NCBI GenBank assembly: GCA_904063045.1 | Contig: CAJFCJ010000001.1 | Span: forward strand, 3,038,001-3,102,000 | Length of the DNA stretch: 64,000 nt | Reading direction: 5' to 3' | Source of the DNA: Dimorphilus gyrociliatus | Lineage: Eukaryota; Animalia; Annelida | In this document: positions 19,448-53,678 of the stretch, piece after piece | How positions within the stretch are numbered: the first letter of the stretch is position 1 | Layout: the number at the start of each line of letters is the position of its first letter | Program-made: the position numbers and the translations under genes | The notes under the pieces: generated by a model | What the model saw: the letters and a program-made list of their open reading frames with translations, nothing else | What the model was told of the DNA's origin: nothing | Databases searched by the model: none

Positions 19448-20702
19448 ATAAAGGATTATTAAAATATACTGATTTTCTTCATATACCTAAAAACCAAATA
19501 AACAAACAAACAAACAAAAATAATGATATAATCCTACTATTTGAATACAAGATGTTTACTAATCTCTATGAACAATTAATGGGAAAAATGAATGTTTCTC
19601 TGTTCTTCTTTTGCATTATATGACAGTGTCTTTTTCTAATCCTGTATACTGTTTACTTTATACGTATCAGTTAAAATATTGCTACTTTTACTTCAAACTT
19701 TAAGATCTATGCCCTCTTTCCTCTCTACCCATCCTTTCAATTATCGTTAATTTAAGGTATTAATTAAGCCCAATTATCTCTTATTTATGCCTTTTCTCTT
19801 ATTGAAATTTAGTATAAATGATGAAATTAAAAAATATATGAAGGAATATAATTGTGAAATAAAAAAAACCAATAACTAAGTTGACGGAGTGAATAAAAGA
19901 AAGTATCCATGTCATTCGCCTCCTTTCATTTCCATGAACATACAAGCTTTCATAAGAAAGATTGAAATTGATAGAAAATCAAAGAATAGGTAAAGAATAT
20001 GAGAGAGAGAGGGAGGGAAGGAGGGAGAAAGAGAGAAAAGAGAATGTAAATGAGTTGATTAAGAACGCGAAAATAATCAATTCTTTATTACTTCTCTTCT
20101 ATTTTACTATTTCTTTCCCTCATTCTTTTTCACAGAACTATATTGAGTCGCAAGAGAACTTAAATAAGAAATAAATGGTTTTTTTTATTTAAAAAATAAT
20201 ACTAAAAAGAACTATTTCACTAGGTCAAAGGTTTCTTTTTAATTTAAGTTCGAATTAAAACTTTCAGAAATAAGAACAACTCATTTCTTTTTTTTGCCAA
20301 GATATTGAAATTTTTAAAGGTCGTAGCCTATTTGTTTCCGTATTAACAAAAGGTAAAAATTGAATAGAAAGAAAATAATAAAAGAGACTATATTGCCCTC
20401 AAACTAAACTTTGATTGGTTAATCTCGCTTGGTGTAAGTCACACAAAAATAAATTAATCAATAACGTTCTTCGTTGCCTATTTATTTCATTGAATACTGT
20501 TTGTTGGGAGTGCAGAGAAAAAAAGAAATAGAAGCCAAATACGAAGAATTAGCGTTCTTTTTTTAATTTCTTTTGATTATATTTGTGCATTTCTTTTTTA
20601 CTTTTATTAAAAAGGAAAATCTTACTTGAATATTAATTATTGATAAATTGATTAAACCAACTGATAAAACTGGAAAATTGCTTGAAAATTCATGAAATTA
20701 CA

Positions 20703-23700
20703 ATGTTAAATAAGCGCTGGTCGCTTTTGTACCTGTGCATTTTAATCTTTAATTCACTTGAAACAACCGAAGGTTTGTTTATTATATTAATTTAAATCTT
20801 TCAATAAAATTTATTAAATAGACCTCATAGTTTAATTTGAATAAACTATTTAATTAATGAATATCTTAGCGGCCTGTAATTGCGTATCGGATTGCGTAGC
20901 ATCATGTTCAGCTGGACAATACTTTGATAGCAGCACTGGAAATTGCGTGCAATGCGAAGCTGGATACTAGTAAGTAGAGAGAGAGAGAGAGAAAGAGAAA
21001 GAGAGAAATATACATATTTTAAAGAGTCTCAAATCAATTTTGAATCTGAAAGTACAATTTAACATAGGACAAAGAAAGTTTAAAGTAGTAAACTCATGTT
21101 ACTTTAATAAACAGAGGTAGAATAATCAATAATGACAAATTCTCTTTAACTGATATAATTAATGGGATCAGATCAATAAGTCCATTATTTACTGTATAAA
21201 AATCAACTCTGAGAAAATTGACTTTAGAAAGGTAAGACTAAATTTTTGATGGAATAAGAGAATTTCCTTTTCTTTCAATTGAAAAAGACAATTTTCTTTT
21301 GATAAGATTTATTTCAAAACTTTCTTCATTAAGAATAGGATTAATTCAGTATATAAATGATTATAAATATCATATTAAGTGTATGCTGCATACGATGTAT
21401 ACTGTATAGCTTATATGTAAAAAATATTTATCAAGGAAATCAATTTAACATTATATCTGATAATAAAGGTTTTCCCTAGATTATATGCAAACTTTATGGG
21501 AATATAAGTAAAATGGTATGGCTATTATGCATCTTCAAATTAATTATTAATGAATACTCTATTATTTATTCATTAATAGTCCCTTTTTACAACAAAATAA
21601 CACTTAAACTTACTTCAATCGATATTCAAACGATTCATTGCTATAAGACTACATAATATTGGTGTTAATTTATAGATTTAGATAAAGATATAGAGATAAT
21701 GATAGAAAAGGGAAACAAAAAGTTAGGGTAAGGGAAATGGAGTAGAGAAAATGAAAGAAAGAAAAAAGACTGAGTCGAGTAAATTTGTACTTAATTAAGA
21801 AGATTTCTTTTTGTACAATATGAGAAAATGTACTTGTTTATATCGTAACTATGACATAGAAGTATTGCAAATATAACTTGCATAGAACTATTAGCTGGCT
21901 TAAAGCCATAAAATTCATATTGGCTATTGTTATATTAAGTTTGCTTTTCTGTTCTTACTAAAATATTTTACCGTTTACTGACAGATTACAGACGAATAGC
22001 AATCTATAAGTTGTATTTGATTTCGCTTTTAGTATCGGATTAGGATTAAAATTAGGTCATTGTCTAGGAAAGTATTTGGTTATGTCATTCTCCTATGCCT
22101 ATTGCGTAATTAACTTGACCTGTTGAATATACTAAGACAATTCAACAGTAAAGAGTTTATTCAAGATAAATTTCTATTTATAGGAAAAATTTAAAGCTTT
22201 TTTTATCAAATAAATAATAAAGTAATCCTATTGAAAACCTTAATAATGGAAAAAATAACGATTTGTCGTCTATTATAGCTGCGCCGGTGGAAGTACAGCA
22301 AAGCAAGCATGTCCTGGAGGAACCAAAAATTCGGCTACTGGTCAATCGCTTGTAAGCGCTTGTGTTGATTGTGGAACTGGTTATTATAGTGCTACTGGGT
22401 CATCTAGTTGTACATTGTGTCCTGCTGGACAGTCTTGTCCATCAACTCAGACAACAACTCCTCAAGATTGTCCTGCTGGCCAATTTTCTCCTGATGGAGC
22501 AGCAACATGCACAGATTGCAGTTCCGGACACTTTTGTCCTACTGTAAACAGTAAAACCCAAACTGCATGTCCTGATGGCTATTATCAAACTGCTTCAGGA
22601 CAAGCAAATTGCAATAATCAATGCCCAGCTGGTCACGAATGTCCAGGAAAAAGTACCGCTGTTCAATGTGCCAAAGGATTTTATAGTCCCGCTGCAGAAG
22701 GTGGATGTAAGCCTTGCGCAAGCGGCTCCTATTCTTCTTCACCAGGTTAGATCATTTATTTAATTATTGTTGTACTTAGAAAATTAATTTTAGGGGCCGC
22801 AAGTTGTACTCAATGCCCCGCTGGATACAAGTGTGCAGACCCAACATCAACTGCTGTAAAATGCCCAAAGGGATGGATATCTGCTGCTGGAAAAATTGCT
22901 TGTACAAAATGTGCGGCTGGACAACAATCGGATTTAGATAATGAAAACTGTGTTGACTGTACTGCTGGATACAAATGCCCAGACCCTGAAGCCAATCCTG
23001 TAGCTTGTTCAACTGGTGAATACTCACTATCTGGAGCAAGTTCGTGTAGTCCCTGCCCTGCTGGAAGCCAATGTCCAAGTAAAAATAGTGCATCCGCATG
23101 TCCACTAGGAACTTATTCTACAGGCGGATGGGCCACTTGTAAAGATTGTCCTGGAGGATACAGTTGCACGTCTTCAACAAGTCCTGTGCAGTGTGTTGGT
23201 GGAAAATATTCTGCATCACAATGTAACTAATTCTTTTTCTTAATCTTTAATTTTTTCTTTTATTAATTCATTTTATTCTCAAATTTGATTTTTCAGCTAT
23301 GACATGCTCTACCTGCCAGGCAGGAAATTATTGTCCACTTGGAGCCGATAGGGAATATGCTTGTCCAACTGGTACTTATAGTGCAGCAGGAGCAACTGCT
23401 TGCACTGATTGTCCAGCTGGTAAAAGTTGTCCATCGCCTGGTAATACCGCTACTGACTGTGAAGCCGGACAATATTCTTTTGCTGGAGAAACAACTTGCA
23501 CTGATTGTCCAGCTGGTCATTCCTGTCCAAGTAAAGATCAAGTGCCAGCTCCTTGTGCCTCTGGATATTATCAAACATCACAAAAGCAAACATCGTGCAC
23601 CCAGTGTCCTGCTGGAAGCTATTGTGATTCGGCCACAGCATCTCCAAAGCCTTGCCCAGGAGGATATCAGAGTTTGGCTGGAGCAACAAGTTGTGAGGCA

Positions 23701-26700: not shown

Positions 26701-29700
26701 TGTCCAAGAGGATATTTTTGCGTTGAAGGAGTAGAAAAACCTGCTCCTTGTCCAATTGGCCGATACGGCAACGAATCTAATGCCGACGCTTTAGAGAAAT
26801 GTCCGCTTTGTGATAAGGGATGGTACTGCGATGCTCCAGGTTTGTTACAACCAAGAGCCCCTTGCGATCCCGGTTATTTATGTCACGAAGGCGCCAAAGA
26901 ATCTGGTCCCACAGATGGCGTAACTGGTGAAATTTGTCCAGCTGGAGGATATTGTACCCTTGGTTCTTATGTGGCTAAGAATTGTCCATTGGGTACATAT
27001 TCGAACGTCACTGGTGCTGTGAACGAATATGATTGTTTTGATTGTGATCCTGGATATTACTGTTCTGCAGTATCTGGAGGAGAACCTACTGGATTGTGCT
27101 GGGGAGGATACTATTGTACCGGAAGAGCGAAAACTCCCAGACAAAACTATACTTTGCCAGGTTATTACTCACCAAATGGCTCGGTTGCTCCCAGAGAATG
27201 TGAAATAGGCTCATATCAACCGTACGAGGCTCAGCCCGATTGTATAACATGCGAACCAGGATTCTACTGTCCTGAAAAGAAGATGGATCACAACATTGCT
27301 TGTCCAGCAGGTAAATTCTGTGGAAATGGTAGCTATGTACCTCAAGATTGTCCACCAGGAACGTTTTCAAATAGAACTCATATGACACACGTAGAAAATT
27401 GTACAGATTGTCCACAAGGATACTATTGCCAAGATAGAGGTATAACAGAACCAACAGGAAAATGCAAAGCGGGTCATATATGCTTCCAAAATGCTCTGAA
27501 CGACGACCCTGTCTTCAATGATGATGTGTCTAGTAACAAAACTATTGTTACTTACGGTGATGTTTGCGCACCAGGCCATTATTGTCCAGCTGGAACCGCT
27601 TTGATGATTCCTTGTCCGAGAGGGACTTATAATCCAGACAGGGGAGGTATCTCAGAAGCGTCAGCTTGTAAACCCTGTCCCGCTGGCAGCTACTGTAATG
27701 GAACCGGTCTCTCAGGTGTTTCAGGAGCATGTGATAAGGGATACTATTGTGTAGGCAGAGCTTTTCTACCAAATCCAAATGACAATACTACAGGATTTAT
27801 TTGTCCACAAAATCATTTTTGCGTAGAAGGAAGCCAAGTACCTAAAACATGTCCTCTTGGTTATAGTGCAAATTTTACAGGTTTATCAGAGTGCACATTG
27901 TGCCTAGCCGGGTATTGGTGTTTGCCAGGAGAATACCCAAGATTATGTCCCAAGGGATCTTATTGTCCAGCTAGTACAAATTCCATTCCTCTTACGATAC
28001 CAAAAGCTTGCCCAGAAGGTACGTATGGAGGACGAGATGGCCTAGAGAAGTCAGATGACTGTAGCAGTTGCGATCCTGGACATTATTGTGTAGGAACTGG
28101 ACAAACTAACTCTACAGGATTAATTCAAGCTGGACATTGGTCAACAACAGGCTCAACAACATCAACTCCTGCTGAAGATGACTCTGTAATTAGAGGATTA
28201 TGTCCAAAAGGTTACTACTGTCCAGAAGGTAGTAGTAGACCAGTTTCTTGTCCATCAGGTACTTTTGGTTTTGGATGGATGTATAAGACTGTCGACGATT
28301 GTAATCCTTGCGAAGGCGGTAAATACTGTCCCGAAACGAATATGACAACAAGCGGTCCAGACTGTTATGCTGGTCATTATTGCTCATCTAAATCACCAGT
28401 TCCTGATCCTGTTAATCAAACATATGGTAGCGAATGTCCAACAGGTTTCTTCTGTCCTCTTGGCTCAGCGACACCTGAGCCTTGTCCAGCTGGAAAATTC
28501 CAAAATGAAACGAGACAGAGCGTGTGTAAAGATTGTCCTCAAGGATTTTATTGCCCGTTAAATACAAGCAATCCATTCTCTTGTCCCTCTGGTTACTGGT
28601 GCATTGCCAATCAACAAGAAGCATTTTTAAATCCATGTCCAATCGGAACCTACAACAATCTTACAGAAAGGCGAACAGTTGCAACATGTCGATCATGTCT
28701 TCCGGGTCATTATTGTGCCATTCCAGGTTTAAGTGAACCTACTGATGAATGTGATCCTGGATGGTATTGTCTAACTCGATCAACTGCAGCTCAACCAGCT
28801 GTCGCCGCTGAAGGAGGAAGATGTACTGCTGGTAATTTCTGTCCAAAGGGAAGCTCACAACAAATACCTTGCACTCCTGGAATGTATTGTAATAATGCAG
28901 AATTAGCAGAACCAGCTGGTAATTGTTCGGCCGGCTACTATTGCTCTGCCGCATCGACAACACCAACTCCAACAGATGGTGTTATGGGTAATTTGTGCCC
29001 AAAAGGATTCTATTGTCCCAGTGGTAGCGAAAGTGGTATAGGATGTCCACCTGGTTCAATGCTTAACGTTACTGGAGGCAAATCAATAGATGAGTGTTTT
29101 AACTGTACTAAAGGATATTATTGCAGTGGTTATGGAAATGATGATCCAACAGGACCTTGTGATCCTGGTTATTATTGTCCAACAGGAATATCTCTTCAAA
29201 ATCCATCTGAATACATTTGCCCTATTGGTCACTTTTGCGTAGGGAATAATCACGAACCAGTAAGATGTGTTTCAGGAACTTACCAAGATCAAACAGGACA
29301 AAGCCAATGTAAAGAGTGTCCGAAAGGATTCTTCTGTGATAACACAATTGCGCCAGTCGTTCTCTTCAGTAGTTCAAAATGTCCAGAAGGTCATTACTGT
29401 CCACCTGGTACGAAACATTCAACGGAATTTAGATGTCCATCTGGAACATATAGCAATTTCACCGGATTAGAAAATGTAACAGACTGTCTTCCATGTCCAG
29501 GAGGTTTCTACTGCGATGCTGAAGCCCAGATATCATATTCCAAAATTTGCCAAGAAGGGTATTTATTACAATGTTACGGTTTTACTTGTTTTAATTTTTA
29601 ACTCTACGGAATTTTATTTTTAGATACTTCTGCAAACAATACGCCAAAACAGCTACACCAACCCAAAATACAGATGCAAACGTATGCCCTATAGGTCATT

Positions 29701-32700
29701 TCTGTCCTTCAGGCACAAGTCAACCAAAGAAATGCCCTATCGGAACTTTTTCGAGTGCAACCCTTTTAACCAAAGAATTAGACTGTCTTAATTGTACAGC
29801 TGTACGTTAAAATTGTCTATTATCTAAAGTTCATTTCTAATTTTGATAATTCTTTGCAGGGATACTACTGTGCTGATTTAGGTAGAACAGAACCAAATGA
29901 TCCTTGTTCAGCAGGATACTATTGTCCTGTGGGATCGAGTAGTCCCACGCAAATTGATTGTCCCATGGGATACTATTGCGTTAATGGCAGTGCAGATCCA
30001 ACAAAGTGCCCTATAGGAACTTTCTCAAACAGAACGATTGTTAAGGCTAAAGACGACTGCCTTAAATGTCTTGGTGGATGGTATTGCGACACTGAAGGAT
30101 TGATCACACCAACAGGTCTTTGCAGTGAAGGATATTTCTGTCCTGAAGGATCAAGTTCAAGACAACCAGCTGCTACTCCATGCCCAGTTGGAAATTATTG
30201 CCCAGAAGGATCAGCAGCTCCATTACCTTGTCGAAACAATACCCACGTCAATCATACACATGCAGTACAGTGCTATAATTGTCCTGCTGGTTTCTATTGT
30301 GTTAAACAAGGGTCCTCTGAAATATGTCCAAAAGGCTACTATTGTCCAGCTGGCACTGGCTTAGACTGGAAAGCCTGTCCAAGAGGATCATATAGTGATG
30401 TTGAAGGATTATATGAAAGATCTCAATGCAAACAGTGCCCGCCCGGAAAATACTGTGACGGAGAACATCTCGCGACACCATCAGGAGATTGTGGTGAGGG
30501 GCACTTTTGTACTTATGGAGTAGATCAGAAATACCCAACGGGAATAAATCAAACTGGACCATTTAATAATACTTGCTATGACGACAGAGAAATTGGATCA
30601 GGAGGAATATGTCCAGTCGGCCATTACTGTAGTCAAGGTAGTTTTGAACCCACGCCTTGTGCCAACGGAACCTACGCCAATAAACCAGGTTCTGCTTCAT
30701 GCAACATATGTCCTCAAGGTTATTGGTGTCCACTTGGCAGTGTCAACTTTACAGATTATCCATGTCCTAAAGGATACTATTGCCCAGTTGGAACCAAGTG
30801 GATCAATGATAATCCATGCCCAGCAGGAACGTTTAATAATAGGACAATGAGATTCAAATTAGATCATTGTTTAGCTTGTCCAGGAGGAGAATATTGTAAG
30901 GACGAAGCATTGTCTGAAACATCAGGACTCTGTGATGCAGGATATTATTGTAATATAAACTCAACCACAGCTACACCGTCAGGAGGTTATATGGGAGATA
31001 TTTGTAAAGCCGGGTACTACTGTCCAGCAGGATCTGATCATCCTTATCCTTGCAAGCCTGGACACTTCTGTTCAGGTGACGGACTTAATTATACTTCTGG
31101 CCTATGCTCACCTGGTTACTTCTGTACAATTAAAGCAACAATTGCTAATCCAACCGATGGTAACATAACTGGAGATATATGTCCAACGGGTGCGTACTGT
31201 CCTCAAGGAAGTTATGCTCCTCTACTCTGTCAAGTTGGCACATACTTGAATGGAACTGGAAATGATGAAGCAGCCGATTGCCTGCCCTGCACACCAGGAT
31301 CTTTCTGTCGTGGAAGCGGTAAGTATTAAAAAATTCATACTAGAATAGATAAAAGACTAATTTAATTAATATGAACAGGTAATGCTATACCAGACGGACC
31401 TTGTGCTGCTGGTTGGTATTGTCCTCCAAGCCAGAGTGATCCTAGACCTGTAGGATATAATTGTACTTTGGGACATTATTGTCCTGAAGGAAGTGCCCAA
31501 CCAGTCAGATGCTCAAGTGGAAAATATCAAGATGAACTTGGATCAACAACATGTAAAACATGCCCGGCTGGTTATTACTGCGATTCAACTTTCGACCCAG
31601 TGGTACTCTACAACAGCTCTTATTGTCCTAAAGGTAAGGTTATATAAAAATATAGTTACCGAAATATCAATTTTTCTTCACATATCAGGCTACTACTGCC
31701 CAATTGAAACTAAGTATGCAAAGGAATTCCCGTGTCCTATATCTACTTTCTTGAATGTTACTCACAAAACAAGTGAAAGTGATTGCTTCCCTTGTAGAGG
31801 AGGATACTACTGTGATCAAACGGGACTTGCGGAGCCGACTGGACCATGTGACGCAGGTTATTACTGTCACCATAGCTCAAACAGCTCTTCGCCAAATCTA
31901 GGAGAACTCGGAGACGAATGTCCACCTGGTTTCTATTGTCCGGAAAATTCGGTTGCTCCTCAAGCTTGTCCACCAGGGACATACAGTTCAGCTATGAAAT
32001 TGAAATCCATTTTAGAATGTACCAACTGTACTGGTGGTAAATACTGCTCTAAATGGAACATGACAGTCATAGAAGGAGATTGTCAAGCCGGCTATTATTG
32101 TCCTAGTGGAGCTGATAAAGCAGACTTTATAAGTTGTCCGGCAGGATCATACTGTCCAACAGGAAGCATAAATCCAACATTCTGCCCAAGAGGAACATAT
32201 TCAAACTCTTTAACTCTAACTGCAGTAGAATTATGTAACAACTGTACAACTGGTTTCTACTGTCCACAAGAGGGACAGACTGATGCAACTCTCACTTGCT
32301 GGGGAGGATTTTATTGTCCTCCTGGTCAATTTGATCCTAATCCAGCAGAGTTCATATGTCCTGTTGGTCTTCATTGTCCAAATGGAAGTAGCACTTACAA
32401 GCAATGCCTACCAGGATACTTTACAAATAGCACTGGAAATAGTGAATGTCAAATATGTCCAGCTGGCTACTACTGCTTACCAGTTCTTCCACAAAATGCT
32501 TCTCTCAATGCTCAGTTGTGTCCAAAAGGCTATTATTGCCCTGAAGGAACGGAACTGAACTGGAACAGCTGTCCAAGAGGTACATTCAGCAATGTTGAAG
32601 GTCTAAAAACGGTTACTGAGTGTACTCCTTGCACCGGAGGAAAGTACTGTGACGGTATCCATCTTGTCGATGTAAGTGGCGATTGCAAAGCTGGTCACTA

Positions 32701-41700: not shown

Positions 41701-44700
41701 CCTGATCAATTTTCTAACCCATGTCCTGCGGGAACATTCAACAATAAGACAAATCAATATTCTTCATCATCTTGTTTGGCTTGCACTCCTGGATACTACT
41801 GTCAAGGAACTGGAAATACAGATCCATCTGGTAAATGTAATCCCGGTTGGTATTGTATCAATGCTTCGTCATCAGCTCAACCAGCAGACAATACTGGAGG
41901 AGAGTGTACACCAGGAAATTATTGCCCTGAGGGTTCATACGAACAGACCCCATGTACAGAAGGAAAATATTGTAACTCTTCTGGATTATCTGCACCTGTT
42001 GATTGGTGTGACGGCGGGTGGTATTGTCCCAATGGTTCTAGTTCCCCAAGAGAAATTATCTGTCCCATGGGTAGCTTCTGTCCAAGAGGAAGTAAACTGC
42101 CTGATCCATGTAGAAATGGAACATATGGAAATGCTACAGCTCTTAAAGACCAAGAAGAATGCAGAGAATGCGACCCAGGCTTTTACTGTAATGAGATTGG
42201 AGCGATAGCAGTTTCTGGTCAATGCGATAGAGGCTTTTATTGTCCACCTGGTCAAAAGACACCAACCCCATACATTTATAGATGTCCTGCAGGTCACATG
42301 TGTCAAGTAGGAACCTATATTCCACAAAGATGTCCAAATGGAGAATATCAACCTGTTGAAGGCAAATGGAGTTGTATTTCTTGTCAAGCAGGCTATTATT
42401 GCGATAATGGTCCAGCACCTATTTCATCATTAGCTAACTATACTTGTCCAGAAGGACATTATTGTCCAACAGGTACTAAAACAGCAAGACAGTATCCATG
42501 TCCTCCAGGTACATTTAACAACTTGACCAAATTGGAAAATGAGGGACAATGTCAGCCATGCTTACCAGGAAAATATTGTCAAAATAGTGGATTGTCAATG
42601 CCAGAGGGAGATTGTTTCGCAGGGTAAGCAGACATTAACTTTAGTTAAACAAATTTACATTTGGCAATATCTCAAACTTAATTTCTTAATCACAGATTCT
42701 ACTGTAATGGAAGCACCATTGAACCAAATCCACCCTATGCAATCTGTCCTATAGGAAACTACTGTCCAACTGGAGTCTATGAACCAATACCTTGTCCACC
42801 AGGTTCATTAGCTCCGTCTACAGGAAATAAAAATGTTTCAGCTTGCGAGCCATGCGCTCCTGGCCATTACTGTACACCTGAAAGTAATAAAGTTGGAAAA
42901 GCTGAAGAATGTGATCCAGGATATGTCTGTATACGCAGTGCCGAAGTTCCAAAACCAACTGACGGTGTGACAGGCTACGTATGCCCAACCGGAAATTTCT
43001 GTCCAAAAGGTTCTGGTAAAGAACAACCATGTGGATTGGGAACATTTGCAGATGTTGTAGGCCTAGGTAAATATAAAAAAAACTGATACAACAAAAAAAA
43101 AGCTTAATTGTATTTAACACATATTGCATATTAATTAATGATAACAATGCACTCCACAGCAAGTTATAGTAAGTTTATCAGCTGCATCCTCAGTAACTAA
43201 TTGTTTTGTAAAAACCCAAACATTTACTCTCATTCCTTAATGTTTAATTAGTAGTCGTTCGTGCAATTTATAAGAATTTTTTTTATAAAAAAAATAGTAA
43301 TGGAATTATTATTTCATTGACTTTTAGGTGAATGTAAAGTTTGCTTGGCTGGAAGAACTTGCCCAGAAATGGGAATGAATATCACAAATCCCTGCCCAAC
43401 CGGTCATTATTGTCCGAATGGTACTTACGATTCTGGTGTTCCATGTCCTATCGGATCTTATAATCCCCATGAGGGAATTGCCGAATCTTCCCAATGTCTA
43501 GACTGTCCTAGTGGATTATTCTGTAATCAAACTGGTATTGATACACCTTCTGGAAATTGTTCAGCTGGTTATTGGTGTGTATCTGGTGCTGAACATCCCG
43601 GACCTAATGACGGAACCAATGGACTTTGTCCAGTTGGTCATTATTGTGAAGAGGGTACTAGAAATGCAACTGCTTGTCCTCCAGGAACTCTTAATCCACA
43701 AGAAGGTGGTAAGAGCTTGTCGGATTGTAGACCATGCACAGGAGGTTACTATTGTGCCGATTATGGTATGACTATACCTTCAGGACCATGCGATAGAAGA
43801 TATTACTGCCCAGCAATTGCCAACATTTCTAACCCAACACCAGTTGATTTCAAATGTATACCTGGTCACTTCTGTCTAAATGGAACAGTTCATCCCATAC
43901 CATGTCCACCTGGAACTTATCAACCGAATGAACTTATGGATGCTTGTATACCTTGTCCTGCTGGAACCTATTGTTTGGCAAACACAAGCGTTCCTTTAGA
44001 ATGTCCAGCATACCACTTTTGCCCAGCAGGAACAATTGAACCTCAAATATGTCCTAATGGAACATTTACAAAATCAACTATTCGCAGCCTTACTAGTGAC
44101 ACGCAATGTGAAATGTGCGAAACTGGAAAATATTGTGTCGATGGTAGAGAAACTGGCGATTGTGCAGCTGGATTCTGGTGTAAGAAAGGAAATTGGCAAC
44201 CAACTCCCTTCTCAAATGAAACAGATTTAGCCATCGGAGAACCTTGTCCATATGGCTATTATTGCCCAACGGGAACTCTGAAACCAGTACAATGCCCAGA
44301 TAATCGTTTCATAGACAAGAGCGGAGCATCACACATTGGAGAATGCGGCTACTGTCCTGCAGGAAAAATCTGCGCCATTGGTGGTATTCCAAAACCATGC
44401 TGGCCGGGCCACTTCTGCCCATATAACGATACTATTTATAAATGCAACAAAACAACATACTTGGATGAATTTGGAGGAAAGAGTCCAATGGATTGCAAAG
44501 TATGCCCAGCTGGATATTACTGCTTTAAAGAGGGAATGACCAACTATTCTGTCAGCCCTTGCCCACCAGGATTTTATTGTTACGAAGCAACATCAAGCCC
44601 AATTCCATGTCCAGCTGGAACTTACAGATCTGAAGCTGGCGCCGAAAATATAACTGAATGTACTTTATGTCCTGCCGGTTATTTCTGTCCCAATGTTAAT

Positions 44701-47700
44701 ATGACCGTAAACGGTACACAATGTGATAGAGGAATGTTCTGCCCTCCAGGAAGCAAATTACAAACGATCTGTCAAGCAGGATATTATTGTAATAGAAGTA
44801 AAACTCAACAGCCTTGTCCGCAGGGATATTATTGTGAAGCCGGATCTGAAACACCAACGAGATGCCCATACGGTCACTACTGTCCAAGAAGCTACTCATC
44901 TAATGGAAACTTAAGAGGAGCGATGACACCAATCAAGTGCCCTCTTGGATACAAGATGTATGAGGGTTCTAACAGGACCACTTTTAGCGAGACTTGTGAA
45001 CCTTGCATGAAAGGATGGTATGGTAATCATCCTGAAAGAAGAGACTGCTATCCATGCAGACCAGGTGTTGTATGTAAGGAAAGGGCAATCAGTGACGTTC
45101 CTTTGAGTAACAATTCAGCATCCTTCGGAGTTAACGTTACTAGATCATATCCATGTCCAGTAGGACATTACTGTCCAAGGAATAGTTCACTACCTACTCC
45201 CTGCCCAGTTGGAACTGCTAATAAGAAACAATACCAAGGTTCTATTGATAACTGTATACCTTGTTCAAAGAATCATTTCCAACCCTATGAGGGACGTAAA
45301 GCTTGCTATTCATGCGGATCTAAAGCCACACAACCAAAGACAGGACAGCCAACTTGCATATGTAATGGAGTAGGAAGAGATTTCCAATTTTCCGACAGAG
45401 ACTGCCCTTGTAAAGTTGGATATAGAGTTATGCTCGGAAGAGAAACTGACTGTGTCAAACACGTCTATGACAATTGCGTTGAAGGAGAAACAAGAACTCA
45501 AGATGGTCTGTGTTACACAGCTAAACAATGGGAAACTCATTGCACAAACAACGTATGTGGAGGAGTAGAAAAATATGCAGGTGTAGAGAAATTGATTGGC
45601 TTATGCAAATGTATTACAGAAGATATTGATGATATATGTGATCTTAATTGTCGATTGAAACAAAGAAATTCTATACAATTACATTGTCCAGAAAACTTGG
45701 CGCCATTTATTTCAGTAAAAAATCAAAATGGACAACCTCTTGCCGAGTTCAAAGTGGAAAATCTCGGAAAAGTTATTAACAGTCAAGATGCTTTTGGAGC
45801 TGATACTTGTACTAAGAAGGGAGCTGAACCGGAACCTATGCATTTACTAGAATGTTCAAGCGATGGTTTCTTCGGTATTTATGAACCTGAAGGCGAACAA
45901 TTGAAGAGCTTATTCTTAAACAATTACAAGGGCATAGTTAGCTTGAATCAAACTCAAGGAGGTAAACACGGCTATACTTATTCGAGAAGAAAAAGAGATC
46001 TTATACACTCTAGGCGTAGAAGAGCGGCATCAACCCTACCTGGGTCGGTCAATTCTGGAGTTTCAAACCCAACTGTTTGCTTGAAATATGGAGAAAGAAT
46101 GCTTTGGACAATCACTAAAGATCATTACCCAGTTTACGACAGAAATAATCTATTCAATACCAATGAGAAATTCGATTTCGGAGGCTTTAGAAAGTTAATA
46201 GAAAAGAAGAGTCAACTATCCTCTTCGGCTACCTTGTTTGCCTACAGATTCGTTGATCCTGGAGCGTATGCTTTCTACTTAAGTTCGAATGTCTATAAGA
46301 AAATGTACATCCGAGTTATGGCTGAAGATGCTCAGTGCACAGAAGATGGTCCATTCTTCCCTACAACACCACGATATGTTATTCAGAATGGCTTATCTAT
46401 TGATCAAGATATTCTCAGAGCACCAGATTGGGTTGTCATTGTGGTTCTTTTGGCTCTGATGATAGCCGCTTTCATTATTCTTATTATTGCGCTTATCTTA
46501 TTTAGGAAATATGGATGGAATAAGTCTATGTTTATTAACCCTAAATACAGAAGAGTTACGAGGAAATATAATATGGAAGACTATTCTAGTAAGGGAGCAG
46601 CTGTCAGCGCTGCTAAGAAGTATCATAGACTGGGTCTTGCTCAGGAGGATGATGACGATGATACTACTTTGGCAATTGCCGGAAAAACAACTGGTGACGA
46701 ATACTGGGATTATGACAAACAAGTTGACTTGGAGGCTTTCTCATCACCTAAATTATACGAAATTCTGTCTGGTCAAAGTAGGGCAGTTACAAGAGATCTT
46801 AGCAAACAAAAGGAAGAAGCTAAGAATATGTATCAAAAGGTTAATAATCAAGTTGATTCACTTAAAGGACTGTGGTTGGCTAAATTCAATTTGGATCCAG
46901 TTAGAGCTGGTTTGGCCACACATGAAGATGTAGCTGCATACGAACTGAAATTGCATGAACTTGAAAGAGAATTAGAACGACGTAAGGATCTAGGTTCTAA
47001 ATACGAAAATGTTCTCGAAAGAATTCGTGAATTACAAGATACTGATGAAGAATTAAGACTCAAACATCAAGTTGCCTTTGATAGTCTAACTAGGGAAGCC
47101 ATAAGACAGATTGATCAACATGTAGAAAGACTCCAAAGAGGAAAGGTTATCAAGAGTAACGGTGAATTTGATATGAATCAGCATCAGAGCATTTTAGGCA
47201 GAATCCAATTATTAATTAGCAAAGCTGATGATGAAATAACTACTGAGTGTACCAGACTCGGAGTTAGTGGAATATTAGGTGATGGAACTGGAGCACCATT
47301 AATCGGACCAAATTCTGAACCTCTCAAGAAAAATCAATTGCTAACAGAAGAAGGATCAGTAAGAGCAAAGGATATATTATTCGAGGATCCTATAACAGGT
47401 TTGATTAAGATCAGAAAAGGTTCTAAAATGCTTACAGCCGATGGTGATATTGTTAATGTTCCAAGTAATTATGTACTTAATACGCACACTGGTAAAGTTC
47501 TTCCAATTGAAGTTGCCGCTTCATTCGACCCCGTTGCTTACAAATTGGTAGTTACAGTGGATAACATAAGCTGTGATACTCGTCACTCAGAACCACTTTT
47601 ACCGTATATACCAATAACCTCTTCAACTCCTATTAAATTTAAACAACCAGAAAACCGAAGGAACTTAAGACTTGGCGAGCCAATAGAAGATCCCGAGAGC

Positions 47701-50700
47701 GGTCTTAACGTACCCATACTAGGCGTGACTATCCATCCAACAACTGGAGCTGTAATCCCAGTTGGTGGTGCCTTTATTGATCCTGTGACAAGATTACTAA
47801 CACCAATTGAAATTGGAGCAATGATGGAAGATCCTGATAATTCAGAATCCCCAGTTCCAATTTTGGGTATAACAATTGACCAAGAGACTGGTAAAGTCTT
47901 ACCTGTTGGTGGATCCCGAACCTCATCTAAGGGAATTGTACCCATTATTCCTTTCGATAATTGTATAGAAAACCTCAGCGGAAAAACAGTAAAAGTAAAC
48001 GGAGCTTATGTAAGAGGAGCTCATGTTAACCCATCTCATGGTGGCATGCAAAGTCTGTACGATTCCATCTCACTTTTCTGTGAAGCTAAACTTTCTCATG
48101 CAACTGGTTCACTTGTTGATGCTCTCCAGAAAGTATCTAATATCTCTACAGGTTCCACTTTAAATATTCGTCACGAAACATCTAATTTGAAAACAATCAG
48201 TGATGATCTTGAAAAGGGAAGGAAAACTATGAAAAATTCTCTTATACGTACTTGTCTCGATTATGAAAGACGATTGGAAAAGACTCATGCCTTGGCAACT
48301 ACTGGAGGTTGTCCAGGCATGTACGAACACTCCCAAACAGGTCAACTTCTCCCGATACTCGTTGGAACAAACATCAGAGATACAGGAACTGAAATGGATG
48401 TACCTATCCTTGGAATTAGACGAGAAAAAACAACTGGTAAACTGAAACCACTAGGCGGTACTCATGAAGATCCAGAGGGATCTGGCTTGGTGCCAATCCT
48501 TCTTGGACATCATGCAATAGATCCTATTAACGGAAAGCTATCAACAATATCAGGAGTTAGATTTGAAAATAAAACAAATACAGTTGTACCGGTAACAGTA
48601 TCAAGTTCGAATAGGAAGCATAGAAAACCACCTCTAGGAGCACTCTCCGCCTTAGAAGATGAAATAGTGGCAAGAAAGAGCTTCTGGAGAAGACAAAGAC
48701 AAAGGGAGCAAGAATTAACTGTTCAAGAACATAAACTACAAACCGAGATTATGTTCCATATACAAACCTTGAAAATCGACCAAATAGAAGGTGCACTGAA
48801 TGCATTTGAAGAAAAGGCACATGATCTTTCCGAAGCTTGGAAGAGAGAGCAGAGAAGAAGAGGAGATGCCCATGGTGAAATTTCAGCTATTGTTCCACCC
48901 AATATTGTTTCTGTTTTAACTCTTAACGATGAAGAAGAACAAAAATCAGAGGAAGAACATCACAATGCTCATAAAAAGTATACCGAAACAATTAAGAAGT
49001 TATGCAGCAAATTAAGAGCCGAACACAATAAACTTAAGACTAAACTATCAGAATTAGAAGGAGCAATGAATCCACAAGCTGAACAGACTGCTCACTCGCG
49101 ATTTGAACAGGCAGTTAGTAGATTACAAGGAGAATTGAAAATGCATTTATTGCAGAAAATGGAAAATTTAGACAAGAAACAATCATCTGAAGAATATTCA
49201 AGACAAAGAAGTGAAATTTTGATGAACGAAGCTAAAGCAATATTGAATGGAGATATTTTAGTCGCTGGTGAGTTTGATTGGAGTTCAGCTGGTATCTTCT
49301 CAGAAGGAGAGGGAGAAAACTCCAACGAACTACTGCCATTATTGAAACAACTATTACAAATGCTTCAAAGCGGACAACCATTCTACTTATCGTCAGATTT
49401 ACTTACAACTTTGCAAGGCGGCGATGTTACTATTTACCAAGGCAATAACTTACAGGTTAATGGACAATCCGGTCATGCTACTTCGTCCAGTTCATCTGCT
49501 GCTCAAGGAACAGTCGATGGTCCTGGTAGAAGCAACGTAGTACATGCTACTCATGTACAAAGAGCTGAACAGGTTACAGGAACAGTTGATGTAAGTGCTA
49601 ATACATCAGCTTTAGTCGGAACAAAAGACTTGGAAGAAGGCTCAGGAGAATCGAAAGCAAGACAAATGTTTACAAAACAATCTTACGAGGCTGCTAAATT
49701 AGAAAATGACCTCAAGAGTGACGAAATCAGAAGAATAAATGAAACTGTTCATGAATATGAGAATAAAAAGAAAGGAGCAATGACAGAAGTAGCAAGAGAT
49801 CTCCAAGATAAATTACTTAAGGCTAATAGTGAGAGTGATAGAGAAAGAATTGTAGCTGAATACGGAAGACAACTTCAGAAATTGACAGATGCTCTTGAAA
49901 AACAAAAGCAAAAACAATTAGAAAAATTAAGAAGAGAATTGATAGAAAAGAGGAAGGCTGAAAAGAAACACCTTCATAGAAAACACATCGGTATGTTATT
50001 TAATTTATTTTTTTATTTAATTATAGATGACCTAATTTAAAAAAAAAAAAACACAATACTTTCTATTCTAGGTGAAGCTCAAAACTTGGGTATTCCCTTG
50101 GAATTTGTACCTCAAATATCAATGCCTCCTCATGCTCAATTGGAAGCTGATATTCAACATCTAACATACGAACAACAGAAATATCTCGCGGAACAAGAGC
50201 ACGCCAATGCACAGAGCAACGAAATGACAGGTACTGAAGGATTAGGAGTTTCCAGTGCAGAAATAGACGCTTATGTCGCAACATTAGATCTAGATCCAAC
50301 TCAACAGGCTCAAATGGCAGAAACATTGAAAACGATGAACGAAAGAGCTCAGGAAAGAGGAACTAAATTGAAATCTTTACTCAAATCTAGAAAGGGAAGA
50401 AACAAGGAAAGACCAGTAGACGTTGATGGCTTATCGGACGATGACAAGAAAAATCTTCTCACAGCTACTTCAGCCCAAGTTGGTGCTGATAGAATTAATG
50501 AAGATAATGCTCTATTAAACGGATTGAGAGGAGCTCACTTAGAAGAACAAAGAAAGGCCGAAGAAGAAACTTTACGTAAAACAATGAAAGGTGTATCAGA
50601 AAGTGATATAAGAAAGATCTTGGAAGAATTAGATAGGCATAGAGTACAAGCTAAGGTTCTAGCTGATAGAAATCAAGTAAGCCAGAGAGATGCCCTCTTG

Positions 50701-53678
50701 GCAAGATTGGAAGCTAAGAGAAGGATAAAGGAAGAACTATTGAAAGAGGGATCTGTCTCTGAGGAATTAGACCATATCGTTAAGAAACAAGCTGAGAAAT
50801 ACGATCAAGAAACTGAAGAAATCGTTACTGATGTTGTCGGAAATCTTAAAAACGCCTATGATAGTAAAGATAGAAAAAATCTTCATCTCGAACAAGAACA
50901 ATTACAAGCTGAAATGGATGTCAAATATAGACAAAAAGTGAGGGAAATGGAGGAAAATCTAGAAGAAGAGGAAGCTAAAGAAGCGAGAGAAACTGAAAAC
51001 CAACTGGAAGATCAAAAGAGATTGGCAATAGACGCCAAAAAGAGTACCTTTGATAGGGAAATGTTGCTACACGGAAAGGGATTGAGCGACGAAGAATTCC
51101 AGAAAATGATGAAAAAACACGAAAAGGAATTAAATCGCTTGAAAAATCTATTTGACTGCGAAAAAGTTCGTCAGAGGAAAGCTTTGGAGAGGAAGATTGC
51201 TGAAAGAAAGAAGACAAGAGGTGAGAGGCTGAAAGAGGATTATAAACTATCTCTTAGCAAGGAACTTAGCGCCCAACAAACAGAAAGAGACAAAGCACAT
51301 AATGATGCTGCAAAGGCTATCGAAGAAAAACTTCTCAAGGAAAAACTAAAAGATAATGACGATGCCGAAAACCTCGTTTACACTGTACTAAGACAGAGAC
51401 ATATGAGAGATGCTGTTCATCTCGAGGAGAGACTAGCTAGAGAGAAAGAAGCAGCAATTGCCGAAGCTAAAGCTCTTGTTGCTCAGCGTAGAGCAGAAGA
51501 TCGTGAAAAGCTTGAAAATGCACATGAAAAGGAACTGACAGAACTTGTTGCAAATAACATTTCAATGTCTGGCGCCGAACTCCAGCAAAAGATTGATGAA
51601 TTGAACAAAAAGTACAAACAACAAATGAGAGAATACGATTCCTTAACCGACAAAATGGTATTAACAGCTGGAAGTGATGTTGAACCTCAAATTGAAATAG
51701 ACCAAACTAATGCTAGGTTGGCTCTAAAAGAAAAACACTTGAGAGAAATTGCCAATGCTATGAAAAAGATTGATTTGGAAGCAAATATCAGAGCAGAATA
51801 TGAAGCAGCTGCCAGAGAAGCTGAGGAAGAGGCAAAACGTTTCAGAGAAAGTACTTTTGTTAAATTACAAAAGGAATTAGAACAACAAAAAGCAGAAGCT
51901 AGAAGAAAGGATGAAGAAAAACGATTAGAGATTGAAAAACAGATGAAGGACATCGAAAGTCAATTGGCTCTTGAGTTACAGAAGGAAGCTGAAGAAATAA
52001 TGAAGAGAGAAGCTGAAAGAGAAGAAACTAGAAGGAGACAACTCGAAGAAAAAGCCATGCAAGAACGTCAAGCAATTATATCGGCTAATGTTAGTGAAGA
52101 TGAACGTAAAAAGCTACTTGAAGACCATGATAAGAATTTGGAAAGATTGAATTCCACTCTTCTAACAGAGAAGGAGAAGGTTGCTTCGGCTCTGAATGGT
52201 AAGTTACTGAAATTATAATCCTATATTTAATACAAAAATTAAAATTCATTTTTTCAATATTAGCCAAACTGGAAGCAAGAAGAAAGGCAAAAGAAGAACT
52301 TGAAAAGGCTAAAGTTGAAAAGAATGCCATATTAGGAGAGGAAAATCAAAATTATCAGAATCTACAAACTTCCCTGCAACGACAAACAGAAATCAACCAA
52401 CAGAAAGACGCAAAGGCTAAAACTGCAGGAACACAACAATCTATGCCAATACCAAAATCATCCGGTATGGAACAAGATTGGATGAACATGTTACTCGCTT
52501 CTCCTCTATTCCAACAAATTAGCGAATTAGAACAAATTCTTGACAAGAATTCTGGTAATGCTGCAAACTTTGTCCAAGGAGGTGATTATTCACAGGCCTA
52601 TATTGACGTTAAAGATGCCCAATGGACTTGTGGAGGAAAACTTAAAACAACTGATATTTCTAACATTTCTCCTGCTCATTTCGTTCTTTATCGTTTCGGA
52701 GTTTTCGTCGTTAAACTACTCAATCATACTATTCAGACACCTCAAGTTACACTCATGTTGGCGTCTAACCTACCAAAGAACAATTACGATCAGAACTGCT
52801 TCAGAAATTCATTCTTCTACGAAAGGGCTAATAACATCCTCTACGTAAGACAAGAACGTCTTGAGTCAGTAGGAGATTTTGTTCTCCTATTGGTGCATGC
52901 ACTGGCTCACATAAATTGCGATGAATTGAGCAGCGACAACAATCCTCTATTCTTGAGAACTTTCTACAGAGGTTTGAGAGTCGTTTGTCAAGATATGTTC
53001 TTCTCTCGATCGCGTACATCCGAAACTTCGCTAAGAATGATGACATCAACCGGACCAGGAGGAAGAGCAGCTTTGGAACACGCCTTTAAACTAACGAATA
53101 TCGCTCCATTGAAGGTTAACGTTACAGAAGAATTAATTGAACAGAGAATCATCGAGGGATCTAACTCAACCGACTTGGAGAAGGAAGCCGATATATTGAA
53201 GATGAAGATGTTAATTCAGTCTTCAAGCGGAGATTCTCAAACAAACATTATTGAAGCTAAAATGGCCTCCTTAAAGGGACAAGAACCACCGAAAGTCCTA
53301 TCTGGATCAGATTCGAAGAAGAGCGTCCAACAAATTAATTCTAGCGCAGAATTCCTTCAGAGTCAGATAACCGATCTACAAGGCAAAATTGATACAATTA
53401 ATGAACAGATGGCTGAGGTGAGAATTCTATACAATACGTGTTTAATGACAAACAATTAATGAATATTTATATTATTATTCTAGCAAATGTCGCAAGAAAT
53501 CCAATACAGAGAAGGCGTAAAAGTTGCTAAATCAGGCAGCGATAAAGACCAACTAAACGAAATAGAGAAACAATTGAATGAATGTATAGGCAGAAGAGAA
53601 GGAACTCAACAGCAATTGAAAATACTTGAAACCCAATTGCAAGAGAAATTTTCTCAGCTGAAAAAATTTGGAAAATGA
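20703..53678 (+). CDS. Giant (~9,900 aa) type I membrane protein: signal peptide, Cys-rich CPxGxYC (GCC2_GCC3 / ephrin-receptor-like) repeat ectodomain, one TM helix, cytosolic hairpin repeats, coiled coil and C-terminal globular domain; ~28 exons
   Basis: Exon 1 (20703-20772) encodes MLNKRWSLLYLCILIFNSLETTE(G). Exon 2 is 20870-20969 and a 1.3-kb intron follows (20970-22278). All long + strand ORFs from 22279 to 53678 then join in frame through about 25 GT-AG introns, mostly 48-81 nt (one of 261 nt), each checked by eye. Stop TGA at 53676-53678 after FSQLKKFGK. Confidence 0.88.
22279..45650 (+). repeat. Cys-rich tandem protein repeat array of the giant gene (CPxGxYC / CxxCxxGxYC units), with a ~2.05-kb higher-order period between ~29,270 and ~42,600
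   Basis: Well over a hundred CPxG[YFH][YF]C-type motifs in the translated ORFs. Landmark W-x-x-C-P codons at 30367, 32561, 34601, 36929, 38960 and 41155. Confidence 0.9.
46429..46503 (+). other. Single transmembrane helix of the giant protein
   Basis: WVVIVVLLALMIAAFIILIIALILF followed by basic RKYGWNK (positive-inside rule). Confidence 0.85.

What the first reader, a model, noticed from the sequence alone, without database searches (positions are those of the whole stretch)
20703..53678. Megadalton single-pass receptor/tether (~9,900 aa) with a ~7,500-aa Cys-rich ectodomain and ~2,300-aa cytosolic machine
Seen: one continuous spliced frame over 33 kb giving signal peptide, Cys-repeat rod rich in N-x-S/T sequons, paired furin sites, a Cys-poor juxtamembrane domain, one TM helix, DPxTG hairpin repeats, a long coiled coil and a terminal globular domain. 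Known: CPxGxYC (GCC2_GCC3 / ephrin-receptor-like) arrays occur in the cysteine-repeat modular proteins of apicomplexans and ciliates, which are linked to regulated organelle discharge, but those are multi-pass. From memory (not verified here), uncharacterised single-pass proteins of this design are predicted in fish, marine invertebrates, oomycetes and ciliates. Inference: an ancient, functionally undescribed system whose ectodomain could span several hundred nm and couple contact or tension to a cytosolic scaffold, e.g. on cilia, sensory cells, gametes or secretory granules. I recognise no characterised animal gene with this architecture.
Basis: partly seen in the sequence, partly recalled or inferred. 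Interest (0 to 1): 0.9.

Follow-up and report, generated by a model that had tools for sequence, protein, structure and literature searches.

The report
Giant ancient single-pass surface protein
This is one real, transcribed gene for a protein of about 9,940 amino acids that crosses the membrane once; it belongs to an unstudied family found across eukaryotes, including fish, birds and some mammals, so it marks a conserved piece of cell biology that nobody has examined.

Summary
Window 20703-53678 (+) holds one gene of 28 exons and 9,941 aa with no internal stop. A 21-kb spliced transcript contig starts in the 5'UTR and matches every junction I could check. The protein has these parts, in order:
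- a signal peptide;
- about 7,200 aa of CxxGxYC (Ephrin_rec_like) repeats, including six super-repeats of about 687 aa;
- a folded membrane-proximal module whose flexible loop carries RRKR and RRRR;
- one TM helix;
- a cytosolic four-helix bundle with beta-hairpin (DPxTG) domains;
- a charged helical rod of about 700 aa;
- a zincin-fold end domain that keeps HxxxH but has lost the catalytic Glu.

The membrane-proximal, cytosolic and end blocks are conserved in vertebrates (zebrafish si:dkey-103g5.4, mouse-type Gm32742), molluscs, a tunicate, a choanoflagellate, an ichthyosporean, metamonads, discobids, CRuMs, an ancyromonad and an oomycete. The family tree roughly follows the species tree. Pfam covers only the Cys repeats. 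I found no solved relative and no paper on the family. Vertebrate members have only about 450 aa outside the cell, so the giant rod is a lineage-variable add-on and not the conserved core. Function is inferred: a glycosylated surface filament or tether docked to the cell cortex. Earlier scan notes cover this same stretch only.

The parts
20572..20702 (+). 5' untranslated region
   Evidence: The spliced transcript contig of run X2 begins at 20572.
20703..20772 (+). Exon 1: start codon and signal peptide (aa 1-24)
   Evidence: Read from the sequence. The exon 1 to exon 2 joint is seen in the X2 contig.
20870..45327 (+). Cys-repeat ectodomain rod, exons 2-25 (part): 234 CxxGx[YFWH]C motifs and most of the ectodomain's 164 N-glycosylation sequons
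   Evidence: Pfam Ephrin_rec_like PF07699 scores 25-29 bits against a cut-off of 23.1.
29257..42337 (+). Six in-register super-repeats of about 687 aa (aa 2227-6344) within the rod
   Evidence: Self-BLAST gives copies starting at aa 2227, 2914, 3601, 4285, 4965 and 5658, with 43-46% identity.
45331..45930 (+). Membrane-proximal ectodomain module, N-terminal lobe (Cys-containing alpha/beta part)
   Evidence: AlphaFold model residues 1-200 have pLDDT mostly 82-95. The block is conserved in all family members.
45949..46035 (+). Flexible loop carrying RRKR (45985-45996) and RRRR (46012-46023), which are convertase-type sites
   Evidence: Model residues 207-235 have pLDDT below 50. These are the only two R-x-[KR]-R motifs in the protein. 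14 of 67 relatives, none of them a named vertebrate, have such a motif in this loop.
46048..46335 (+). Cupredoxin-like beta-sandwich next to the membrane
   Evidence: Foldseek and Atlas match plastocyanin and other cupredoxins with TM about 0.5-0.58 normalised on the hit. I saw no type-1 copper ligand pattern in the sequence; this was read by eye, not tested.
46429..46503 (+). Single transmembrane helix (aa 7597-7621), with basic residues after it
   Evidence: Kyte-Doolittle mean of 3.64 over 19 aa, the only strong segment. The model shows a helix at residues 367-393.
46513..46713 (+). Disordered acidic cytosolic linker that runs into the conserved EFWDYE-type motif
   Evidence: pLDDT below 50. 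The consensus motif is in alignment A1.
46744..48891 (+). Conserved cytosolic core: a helical bundle (46744-47259 and 48046-48303), two beta-hairpin DPxTG repeat domains (47377-48036 and 48319-48597) and a helical hairpin (48640-48891)
   Evidence: The AlphaFold model has pLDDT mostly 85-97. VIA-align places helices 554-640 and 906-990 on four-helix bundles with Z 14, which is a generic score. Nearly invariant residues (G812, G813, P818 and others) are listed. No solved relative was found.
49375..49398 (+). QPFYLSSD motif at the end of the conserved cytosolic block
   Evidence: Homologue alignments stop near first-model aa 8500-8512, about aa 8580-8592 in the final model.
50485..52430 (+). E/K/R-rich helical rod (40-50% charged residues, 1-4% Gly+Pro); its length varies between lineages
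   Evidence: Composition scan. Translation of the exon. The block is shorter or missing in vertebrate orthologues.
52647..53009 (+). Zincin-fold end domain, with HALAH at 52896-52910 in place of HExxH
   Evidence: AlphaFold pLDDT of 95-98 over the core. VIA-align gives Wss1 Z 9.0 and abylysin Z 8.0, and ranks 1-21 are all zinc-dependent hydrolases. Both His and one Asp are conserved in at least 90% of 65 relatives.
53187..53678 (+). C-terminal helical tail, last intron (53418-53483) and stop codon (53676-53678)
   Evidence: The mollusc orthologue aligns to within a few residues of the end. Sequence read.
53900..53905 (+). AATAAA, the likely polyadenylation signal
   Evidence: The first AATAAA lies 222 nt after the stop.

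Best explanation
This is a type I membrane glycoprotein and a full-length member of an uncharacterised family that goes back to early eukaryotes.

Shown:
- It is one transcribed gene.
- It has an N-terminal signal peptide and a disulfide-rich, sequon-rich repeat rod outside the cell.
- It has a folded membrane-proximal module (an N-lobe and a cupredoxin-like sandwich) split by a flexible polybasic loop, and one TM helix.
- Inside, it has a well-folded core (a helical bundle with beta-hairpin repeat domains), a long charged helical spacer and a zincin-fold end domain without the catalytic glutamate.
- The membrane-proximal module, the core and the end domain are conserved from vertebrates to metamonads.

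Inferred:
- The rod is a stiff surface filament. If it is built like furin-type Cys-rich domains, its length would be of order 300 nm. Its length was tuned lineage by lineage, from about 100 aa of repeats in vertebrates to about 7,200 aa here.
- A furin-type convertase cuts the loop about 150 aa above the membrane. The mature protein would then be two chains, or the rod could be shed.
- The cytosolic helices pair the molecule.
- The dead zincin domain, possibly still binding metal through His-His-Asp, acts as a peptide-docking module at the end of a helical spacer of up to about 100 nm. That would tie the surface filament to a cortical or cytoskeletal structure.

The most likely role is therefore a surface tether, or an adhesion or mechanical link, rather than an enzyme or a channel.
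For: - One gene: the exon chain has no internal stop, a spliced 21-kb contig runs from the 5'UTR, and a single exon spans the ectodomain, the TM helix and the cytosolic part.
- Topology: a signal peptide, 164 sequons outside against 58 expected and 15 inside against 13 expected, 791 Cys outside against 13 inside, and one TM helix followed by basic residues.
- Folded modules: AlphaFold mean pLDDT of 83 and 84.
- Zincin fold with conserved HxxxH and Asp but no Glu.
- Polybasic sites lie in the only disordered ectodomain loop, and 14 of 67 relatives share such a motif there.
- Family: 1,189 cluster representatives at E<=1e-3 and 108 at E<=1e-30. Named members come from vertebrates, molluscs, an orthonectid, a tunicate, a choanoflagellate, an ichthyosporean, Fabomonas, Diphylleia, Kipferlia, Chilomastix, Barthelona, Andalucia, Percolomonas, Entosiphon, Diplonema and Achlya.
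- All three conserved blocks are collinear in these members.
- The tree roughly follows the species tree.
Against: - No experiment or localisation exists for any member, so the function rests on architecture alone.
- Vertebrate members lack both the long rod and the polybasic loop. Neither a long filament nor cleavage can therefore be essential to the conserved function.
- No partner or cytoskeleton-binding motif was recognised.
- The beta-hairpin domains have no structural relative to borrow a function from.
- The charged rod could be a coiled coil or a single alpha-helix; pairing is assumed.
- Rod length is extrapolated from other Cys-rich domains from memory. It was not computed from a model of this rod.
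Confidence: 0.55

Rival explanations
1. It is a signalling receptor. Ligand or contact at the ectodomain changes the pairing or conformation of the cytosolic helical bundle and beta-hairpin core, which recruits effectors. The zincin-like domain would be a regulated docking site.
For: The most conserved parts are the membrane-proximal ectodomain module, the TM helix and the cytosolic core, which is the layout of a transducer. Vertebrate members keep a small ectodomain that could still bind a ligand. The bundle superposes on chemoreceptor ligand-binding four-helix bundles with Z 13-14.
Against: Those Z-scores are in the range the tool calls generic for helical bundles. No kinase, phosphatase, GTPase, death-fold or other signalling domain was found by Pfam. 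A helical rod of 700 aa or more and a 7,000-aa repeat array are typical of structural proteins.
Confidence: 0.2
2. It is a secretory-organelle or extracellular-matrix scaffold. The Cys-rich rod would sit in the lumen of a granule or be released after convertase cleavage as a matrix or coat filament, and the membrane stub with its cytosolic part would serve in sorting or docking of the organelle.
For: Polybasic convertase-type sites lie just above the membrane in long-rod members. GCC2_GCC3 / ephrin-receptor-like repeats occur in the apicomplexan CRMP complex needed for rhoptry discharge (PMC9815656). A tunicate member is annotated with a chitin-binding domain.
Against: CRMPs are nine-pass proteins and the partner MIC15 has a short tail, so there is no homology beyond the repeat type. 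Vertebrate members have neither a rod nor the polybasic loop. Nothing in the cytosolic part resembles known sorting or SNARE-related domains.
Confidence: 0.12
3. It is the orthologue of an already characterised protein that my searches failed to connect by name.
For: Named hits cover only about a quarter of database proteins. I saw names for about 90 of the 1,189 relatives. The paper library lacks most subscription journals.
Against: - All informative names are 'uncharacterized' or 'hypothetical', or are spurious coiled-coil names.
- Pfam has no model for about 1,700 conserved residues.
- Sequence profiles of the core and the end domain find nothing significant in the PDB.
- AlphaFold DB cluster neighbours are unnamed family members.
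- No paper mentions dkey-103g5.4, and Gm32742 appears once in an expression table.
Confidence: 0.08
4. It is two or more adjacent genes, or an assembly artefact of a repeat array, wrongly read as one frame.
For: The rod is highly repetitive, and the transcript assembly shows repeat-induced branch points (non-GT..AG 'joints' 23378-25505 and 25023-25789, and loose ends). I could lay reads on only 5.9 kb.
Against: - The frame is kept across 27 introns.
- A 21-kb contig is collinear over the part checked.
- A single exon joins the rod, the TM helix and the cytosolic part.
- Full-length relatives of 5,000-7,500 aa with the same order of parts come from independent genome and transcriptome projects.
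Confidence: 0.03

Closest known systems
Vertebrate predicted proteins si:dkey-103g5.4 (zebrafish and other fish), 'predicted gene 32742' (rodent) and LOC entries in birds, reptiles, amphibians, sturgeon and coelacanth
   Same: They are orthologous over the membrane-proximal ectodomain module, the TM helix, the cytosolic helical-bundle and beta-hairpin core, and the zincin-like end domain. Identity is 31-38% over about 1,300 aa, with E down to 1e-213.
   Different: They are 1,500-2,400 aa long with only about 450 aa outside the cell (one or two Cys repeats), no polybasic loop and a much shorter charged rod. None has been studied.
Long protist and invertebrate members: Chromosphaera 7,076 aa, Fabomonas 7,499 aa, Intoshia 6,337 aa, Kipferlia 6,264 aa, Barroeca 6,260 aa
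   Same: They have the same overall design: thousands of residues of Ephrin_rec_like-type repeats, then the membrane-proximal module, the TM helix, the cytosolic core and the end domain, in the same order.
   Different: Identity is 22-31%. The window's protein is the longest one seen here and has its own six-fold super-repeat of about 687 aa.
Apicomplexan cysteine repeat modular proteins (CRMPA/B) and MIC15
   Same: They have large Cys-rich extracellular parts that include ephrin-receptor-like repeats (PMC9815656).
   Different: CRMPs have nine TM helices, and MIC15 has TSP1 domains and a 179-aa tail. Neither has the cytosolic core or a zincin-like end domain.
Minimal zincin metalloproteases (Wss1/SPRTN, abylysin, selecase)
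   Same: The end domain has the same fold. Wss1 gives Z 9.0 with rmsd 3.2 A over 108 residues, and the HxxxH motif sits on the active-site helix.
   Different: The catalytic Glu is replaced by Ala here, and by Ser or Cys in most of the relatives shown. Sequence identity is about 10%.
Cupredoxins (plastocyanin, amicyanin)
   Same: The beta-sandwich next to the membrane superposes on them, with TM 0.5-0.58 normalised on the hit.
   Different: I saw no His/Cys/His/Met copper site in the sequence (not formally tested), and the setting is extracellular in a eukaryotic receptor. This is a shared fold only.

Membership tests
Uncharacterised si:dkey-103g5.4 / Gm32742 family (no Pfam model) | Membrane-proximal ectodomain module (N-lobe plus beta-sandwich) directly before a single TM helix | tested here: met
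   phmmer hits to 1,189 cluster representatives cover this block. It is collinear in vertebrate and protist members and folds with high confidence.
Uncharacterised si:dkey-103g5.4 / Gm32742 family (no Pfam model) | Conserved cytosolic core: helical bundle plus beta-hairpin DPxTG repeat domains | tested here: met
   Alignment A1 of 81 sequences has nearly invariant Gly and Pro positions. The model has pLDDT of 85-97.
Uncharacterised si:dkey-103g5.4 / Gm32742 family (no Pfam model) | C-terminal zincin-like domain with HxxxH and a downstream Asp | tested here: met
   Found in 90 of the fetched relatives. H155, H159 and D168 are conserved in at least 90% of sequences in A2.
Ephrin_rec_like / GCC2_GCC3 repeat proteins (Pfam PF07699) | Match to the Pfam model above its gathering score | tested here: met
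   25.0 and 29.2 bits against a cut-off of 23.1 on two exons. There are 234 CxxGx[YFWH]C motifs.
Cysteine repeat modular proteins (CRMP) | Conserved core with nine transmembrane helices | tested here: not met
   Only one hydrophobic segment qualifies as a TM helix. The CRMP definition is from PMC9815656.
Zincin metalloproteases (Wss1/SprT-like minimal zincins) | Zincin fold: a beta-sheet followed by the active-site helix | tested here: met
   VIA-align gives Z 9.0 for Wss1. Ranks 1-21 are all zinc-dependent hydrolases, mostly zincin peptidases. Foldseek gives the same set at weak E-values.
Zincin metalloproteases (Wss1/SprT-like minimal zincins) | Catalytic HExxH with the general-base Glu | tested here: not met
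   The motif is HALAH here, and HC.AH or HS.AH in most of the relatives shown. No sequence shown in A2 has Glu at that position.
Zincin metalloproteases (Wss1/SprT-like minimal zincins) | Zinc binding and peptidase activity | not testable with these tools
   This needs metal analysis and an activity assay on the recombinant domain.
Cupredoxins | Type-1 copper site (His, Cys, His, Met) | tested here: inconclusive
   There is fold similarity only. I saw no ligand pattern by eye in the translated sequence, but I made no residue-level superposition.

The most novel reading that the evidence does not exclude
The family is a system as old as the last common ancestor of eukaryotes, and no one has described it. 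A surface filament of adjustable length would be coupled through one TM helix to a conserved cytosolic module of new fold and a dead-protease docking domain. It would serve a basic function such as surface-to-cortex attachment or mechanosensing at cilia, feeding structures or cell contacts. The function would be retained, with a shortened ectodomain, in fish, birds and some mammals.
Probability: 0.25. Interest if true: 0.85.

Novelty: new variant of a known kind. Interest (0 to 1): 0.62.

Why it matters
About 1,700 residues of well-folded, strongly conserved sequence are shared from vertebrates to metamonads. They have no Pfam model, no solved relative and no paper. Such 'conserved unknowns' are rare among proteins this large and this widely kept. 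The family has an orthologue in zebrafish, where it can be manipulated genetically, so the function can be tested directly. The contrast between rods of about 7,000 aa in invertebrates and protists and stubs of about 450 aa in vertebrates is a natural experiment on what the rod is for. The dead zincin end domain is a further example of a protease fold turned into a non-catalytic module.

Tried and rejected
- Pfam on all non-repeat parts and on four relatives found only Ephrin_rec_like; everything else was below threshold.
- PDB sequence searches found nothing significant. I tried the single end domain, profiles of the end domain and of the core, and one rod exon.
- ESM Atlas searches by features were uninformative.
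- Foldseek and VIA-align on the 1,190-residue model returned only unnamed family members, cupredoxins for one small domain, and generic helical bundles. Weak beta-propeller matches (probability below 0.1) were not accepted.
- I considered a link to the apicomplexan CRMP/MIC15 rhoptry-discharge complex and rejected homology.
- Literature searches for the vertebrate gene names and for the architecture found nothing relevant.
- A word-based search with the 7,076-aa Chromosphaera protein added only one tunicate member.
- My first splice model had three errors, all corrected: the end of exon 3, a missed 87-nt exon at 35034-35120, and a truncated exon at 40117-40294.
- The source organism was not identified. 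Signs point to a small marine protostome, possibly a rotifer: non-coding GC of 27%, introns of about 60 nt, a sister position to molluscs in the tree, and 95-99% identical transcripts in a coral metatranscriptome. This is a guess.
Full report
**1. Is it there?**

The window is AT-rich (GC about 0.27) except for 22-54 kb, where GC is about 0.41 and long + strand ORFs follow one another. I joined neighbouring ORFs through the best GT..AG pairs that keep the frame. This gave a continuous reading frame from the ATG at 20703 to the TGA at 53676-53678.

Two public runs hold this sequence. X2 is from the coded source organism. X1 is a coral metatranscriptome.

Reads laid on 20500-26400 show a 21,021-nt spliced contig in X2:
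- It begins at 20572, in the 5'UTR.
- It uses exon 1 (the signal peptide), the 100-nt exon 2 and the 1,309-nt intron.
- It uses every further junction I had predicted, with one correction: exon 3 ends at 22745, giving a 48-nt intron.
- Its record position at 26103 is 3777, exactly what the model predicts.
- If the contig stays collinear, it ends near 44530, inside the giant exon.

I found two more corrections by comparing the sequence with the repeat pattern: an 87-nt exon at 35034-35120, and an exon that starts at 40117.

The final model has 28 exons and 9,941 aa. Introns are mostly 48-97 nt, apart from one of 1,309 nt and one of 261 nt. Exon 43328-49990 alone encodes the last Cys repeats, the membrane-proximal domain, the TM helix and 1,180 aa of cytosolic sequence. 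The outside and inside halves therefore cannot be separate genes.

**2. Anatomy**

- Residues 1-24 are a signal peptide.
- The next 7,200 or so residues contain 234 CxxGx[YFWH]C motifs and 10.4% Cys. Pfam recognises them as Ephrin_rec_like.
- Six in-register super-repeats of about 687 aa, 43-46% identical, fill aa 2227-6344. This agrees with scan note s1-081710.
- N-x-S/T sequons number 164 outside against 58 expected from composition, but 15 against 13 expected inside. Together with the 791 to 13 split in Cys, this fixes the topology.
- One segment, aa 7597-7621, is strongly hydrophobic and is followed by basic residues.

An AlphaFold model of window:45331-48900, built on an alignment of 81 relatives, has mean pLDDT of 83. 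It shows, in order:
- a folded N-lobe;
- a disordered loop that holds the only two R-x-[KR]-R motifs of the protein, RRKR and RRRR;
- a beta-sandwich that matches cupredoxins;
- the TM helix;
- a disordered acidic linker;
- a compact cytosolic core.

In that core, long helices pack as a four-helix bundle, and two domains of short beta-hairpins, the DPxTG repeats, are inserted into it.

Downstream of the core lie a conserved QPFYLSSD motif, a Ser/Gly-rich stretch and about 700 aa with 40-50% charged residues and almost no Gly or Pro.

The end domain was modelled from 65 relatives with pLDDT of 84, and 95-98 in its core. It has a zincin fold: Wss1 gives Z 9.0 and abylysin Z 8.0, and ranks 1-21 are all zinc-dependent hydrolases (the weaker Foldseek results agree). 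The two His of HxxxH and a downstream Asp are conserved in at least 90% of relatives. The catalytic Glu is Ala here and Ser or Cys in most of the relatives shown. This agrees with scan note s1-084513.

**3. Relatives**

A full HMMER scan with the membrane-proximal and cytosolic part found 1,189 cluster representatives at E<=1e-3 and 108 at E<=1e-30. Names could be recovered for a subset:
- Vertebrates: many fish (si:dkey-103g5.4), sturgeon, coelacanth, frogs, turtles, lizards, crocodilians, birds, a jerboa ('predicted gene 32742'), sheep and goat.
- Invertebrates: two molluscs, the orthonectid Intoshia and the tunicate Clavelina.
- Close relatives of animals: the choanoflagellate Barroeca and the ichthyosporean Chromosphaera (two paralogues).
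- Other protists: Fabomonas, Diphylleia, Kipferlia, Chilomastix, Barthelona, Andalucia, Percolomonas, Entosiphon, Diplonema and the oomycete Achlya.

The three conserved blocks occur in the same order in all of them.

A maximum-likelihood tree of the core recovers the following:
- vertebrates with a sensible internal order;
- the window's protein with its 85%-identical relative, next to molluscs;
- the choanoflagellate and the ichthyosporean branching next;
- the two fornicates together, and Heterolobosea with Euglenozoa;
- a second paralogue clade of Chromosphaera-2 and Clavelina.

This pattern fits vertical descent from an early eukaryote. The tree is unrooted, several rows are long or partial, and absence in other groups was not tested.

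Vertebrate proteins have a signal peptide, one or two Cys repeats and the TM helix at about residue 390-495. The giant rod is therefore not a conserved feature. A polybasic motif in the loop is present in 14 of 67 relatives, none of them a named vertebrate.

**4. Is it known?**

- Pfam has no model for the conserved blocks, either in this protein or in four relatives.
- Sequence profiles find nothing in the PDB.
- Structural neighbours in the AlphaFold DB clusters are unnamed family members.
- No paper in the library mentions dkey-103g5.4. Gm32742 appears once, in an expression table.
They share only the repeat type.

**5. How it probably works**

Shown: a type I glycoprotein with the domain order given above.

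Inferred:
- The disulfide-locked repeats form a stiff filament. Its length of order 300 nm is extrapolated from furin-type Cys-rich domains from memory; it was not modelled here.
- The polybasic loop is cut by a convertase in the secretory pathway.
- The cytosolic helices pair the molecule.
- The charged rod acts as a spacer.
- The dead zincin domain docks onto a partner.

I favour a surface tether or mechanical link (0.55, including the shown parts). The rivals are a signalling receptor (0.2), a granule or matrix scaffold (0.12), an overlooked known orthologue (0.08) and an artefact or several genes (0.03).

**6. Surroundings**

The flanks hold unrelated genes:
- a NACHT gene piece, on the - strand at 6684-7232;
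- a mariner-type transposase fragment, on the - strand at 14028-14768;
- a 3'-5' exonuclease domain, on the + strand at 54961-55233;
- an SNF-family transporter, on the + strand at 56858-57277.

**7. Verdict**

It is a full-length member of an unstudied family found across eukaryotes. I file it as a new variant of a known kind (giant single-pass surface proteins with Cys-rich repeats), with a cytosolic part that has no known relative. Interest is 0.62.

Noticed in passing
window 20975-21010: There is an (AG)n-rich microsatellite directly after the donor site of exon 2. The read-laying tool skipped it as a repeat.
   Followed up: no
window 6684-7232 (-): An ORF matches the Pfam NACHT domain (27.5 bits against a cut-off of 26.7). 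It probably belongs to the STAND/NLR-like genes that the scan noted upstream.
   Followed up: partly
window 14028-14768 (-): An ORF matches HTH_32 and a partial mariner-type Transposase_1 domain. It looks like a transposon remnant between genes.
   Followed up: partly
window 54961-55233 (+) and 56858-57277 (+): The downstream neighbours are a 3'-5' exonuclease domain (DNA_pol_A_exo1, E 2.5e-10) and a sodium:neurotransmitter symporter exon (SNF, E 1.9e-56).
   Followed up: partly
relatives P0197 and P0005 (bird and metaclust gene models): Two gene models fuse this family to ankyrin repeats and are named NF-kappa-B inhibitor zeta-like. In birds the gene probably lies next to NFKBIZ, which gives a place to look for a human remnant.
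   Followed up: no
relatives P0106 (Chromosphaera) and P0224 (Clavelina, 7,082 aa): A second paralogue clade with 100/99 support groups an ichthyosporean copy with a tunicate protein annotated as chitin-binding. The family may have duplicated before animals arose.
   Followed up: partly
window 22589-26086, run X1: A coral metatranscriptome holds spliced transcript pieces 95-99% identical to this gene, with scattered single-base differences. A close strain or species of the source animal therefore lives in, or was fed to, that coral sample.
   Followed up: partly
window 17647-18786 (+): A 379-aa ORF upstream of the giant gene has no Pfam match. I did not examine it further.
   Followed up: no
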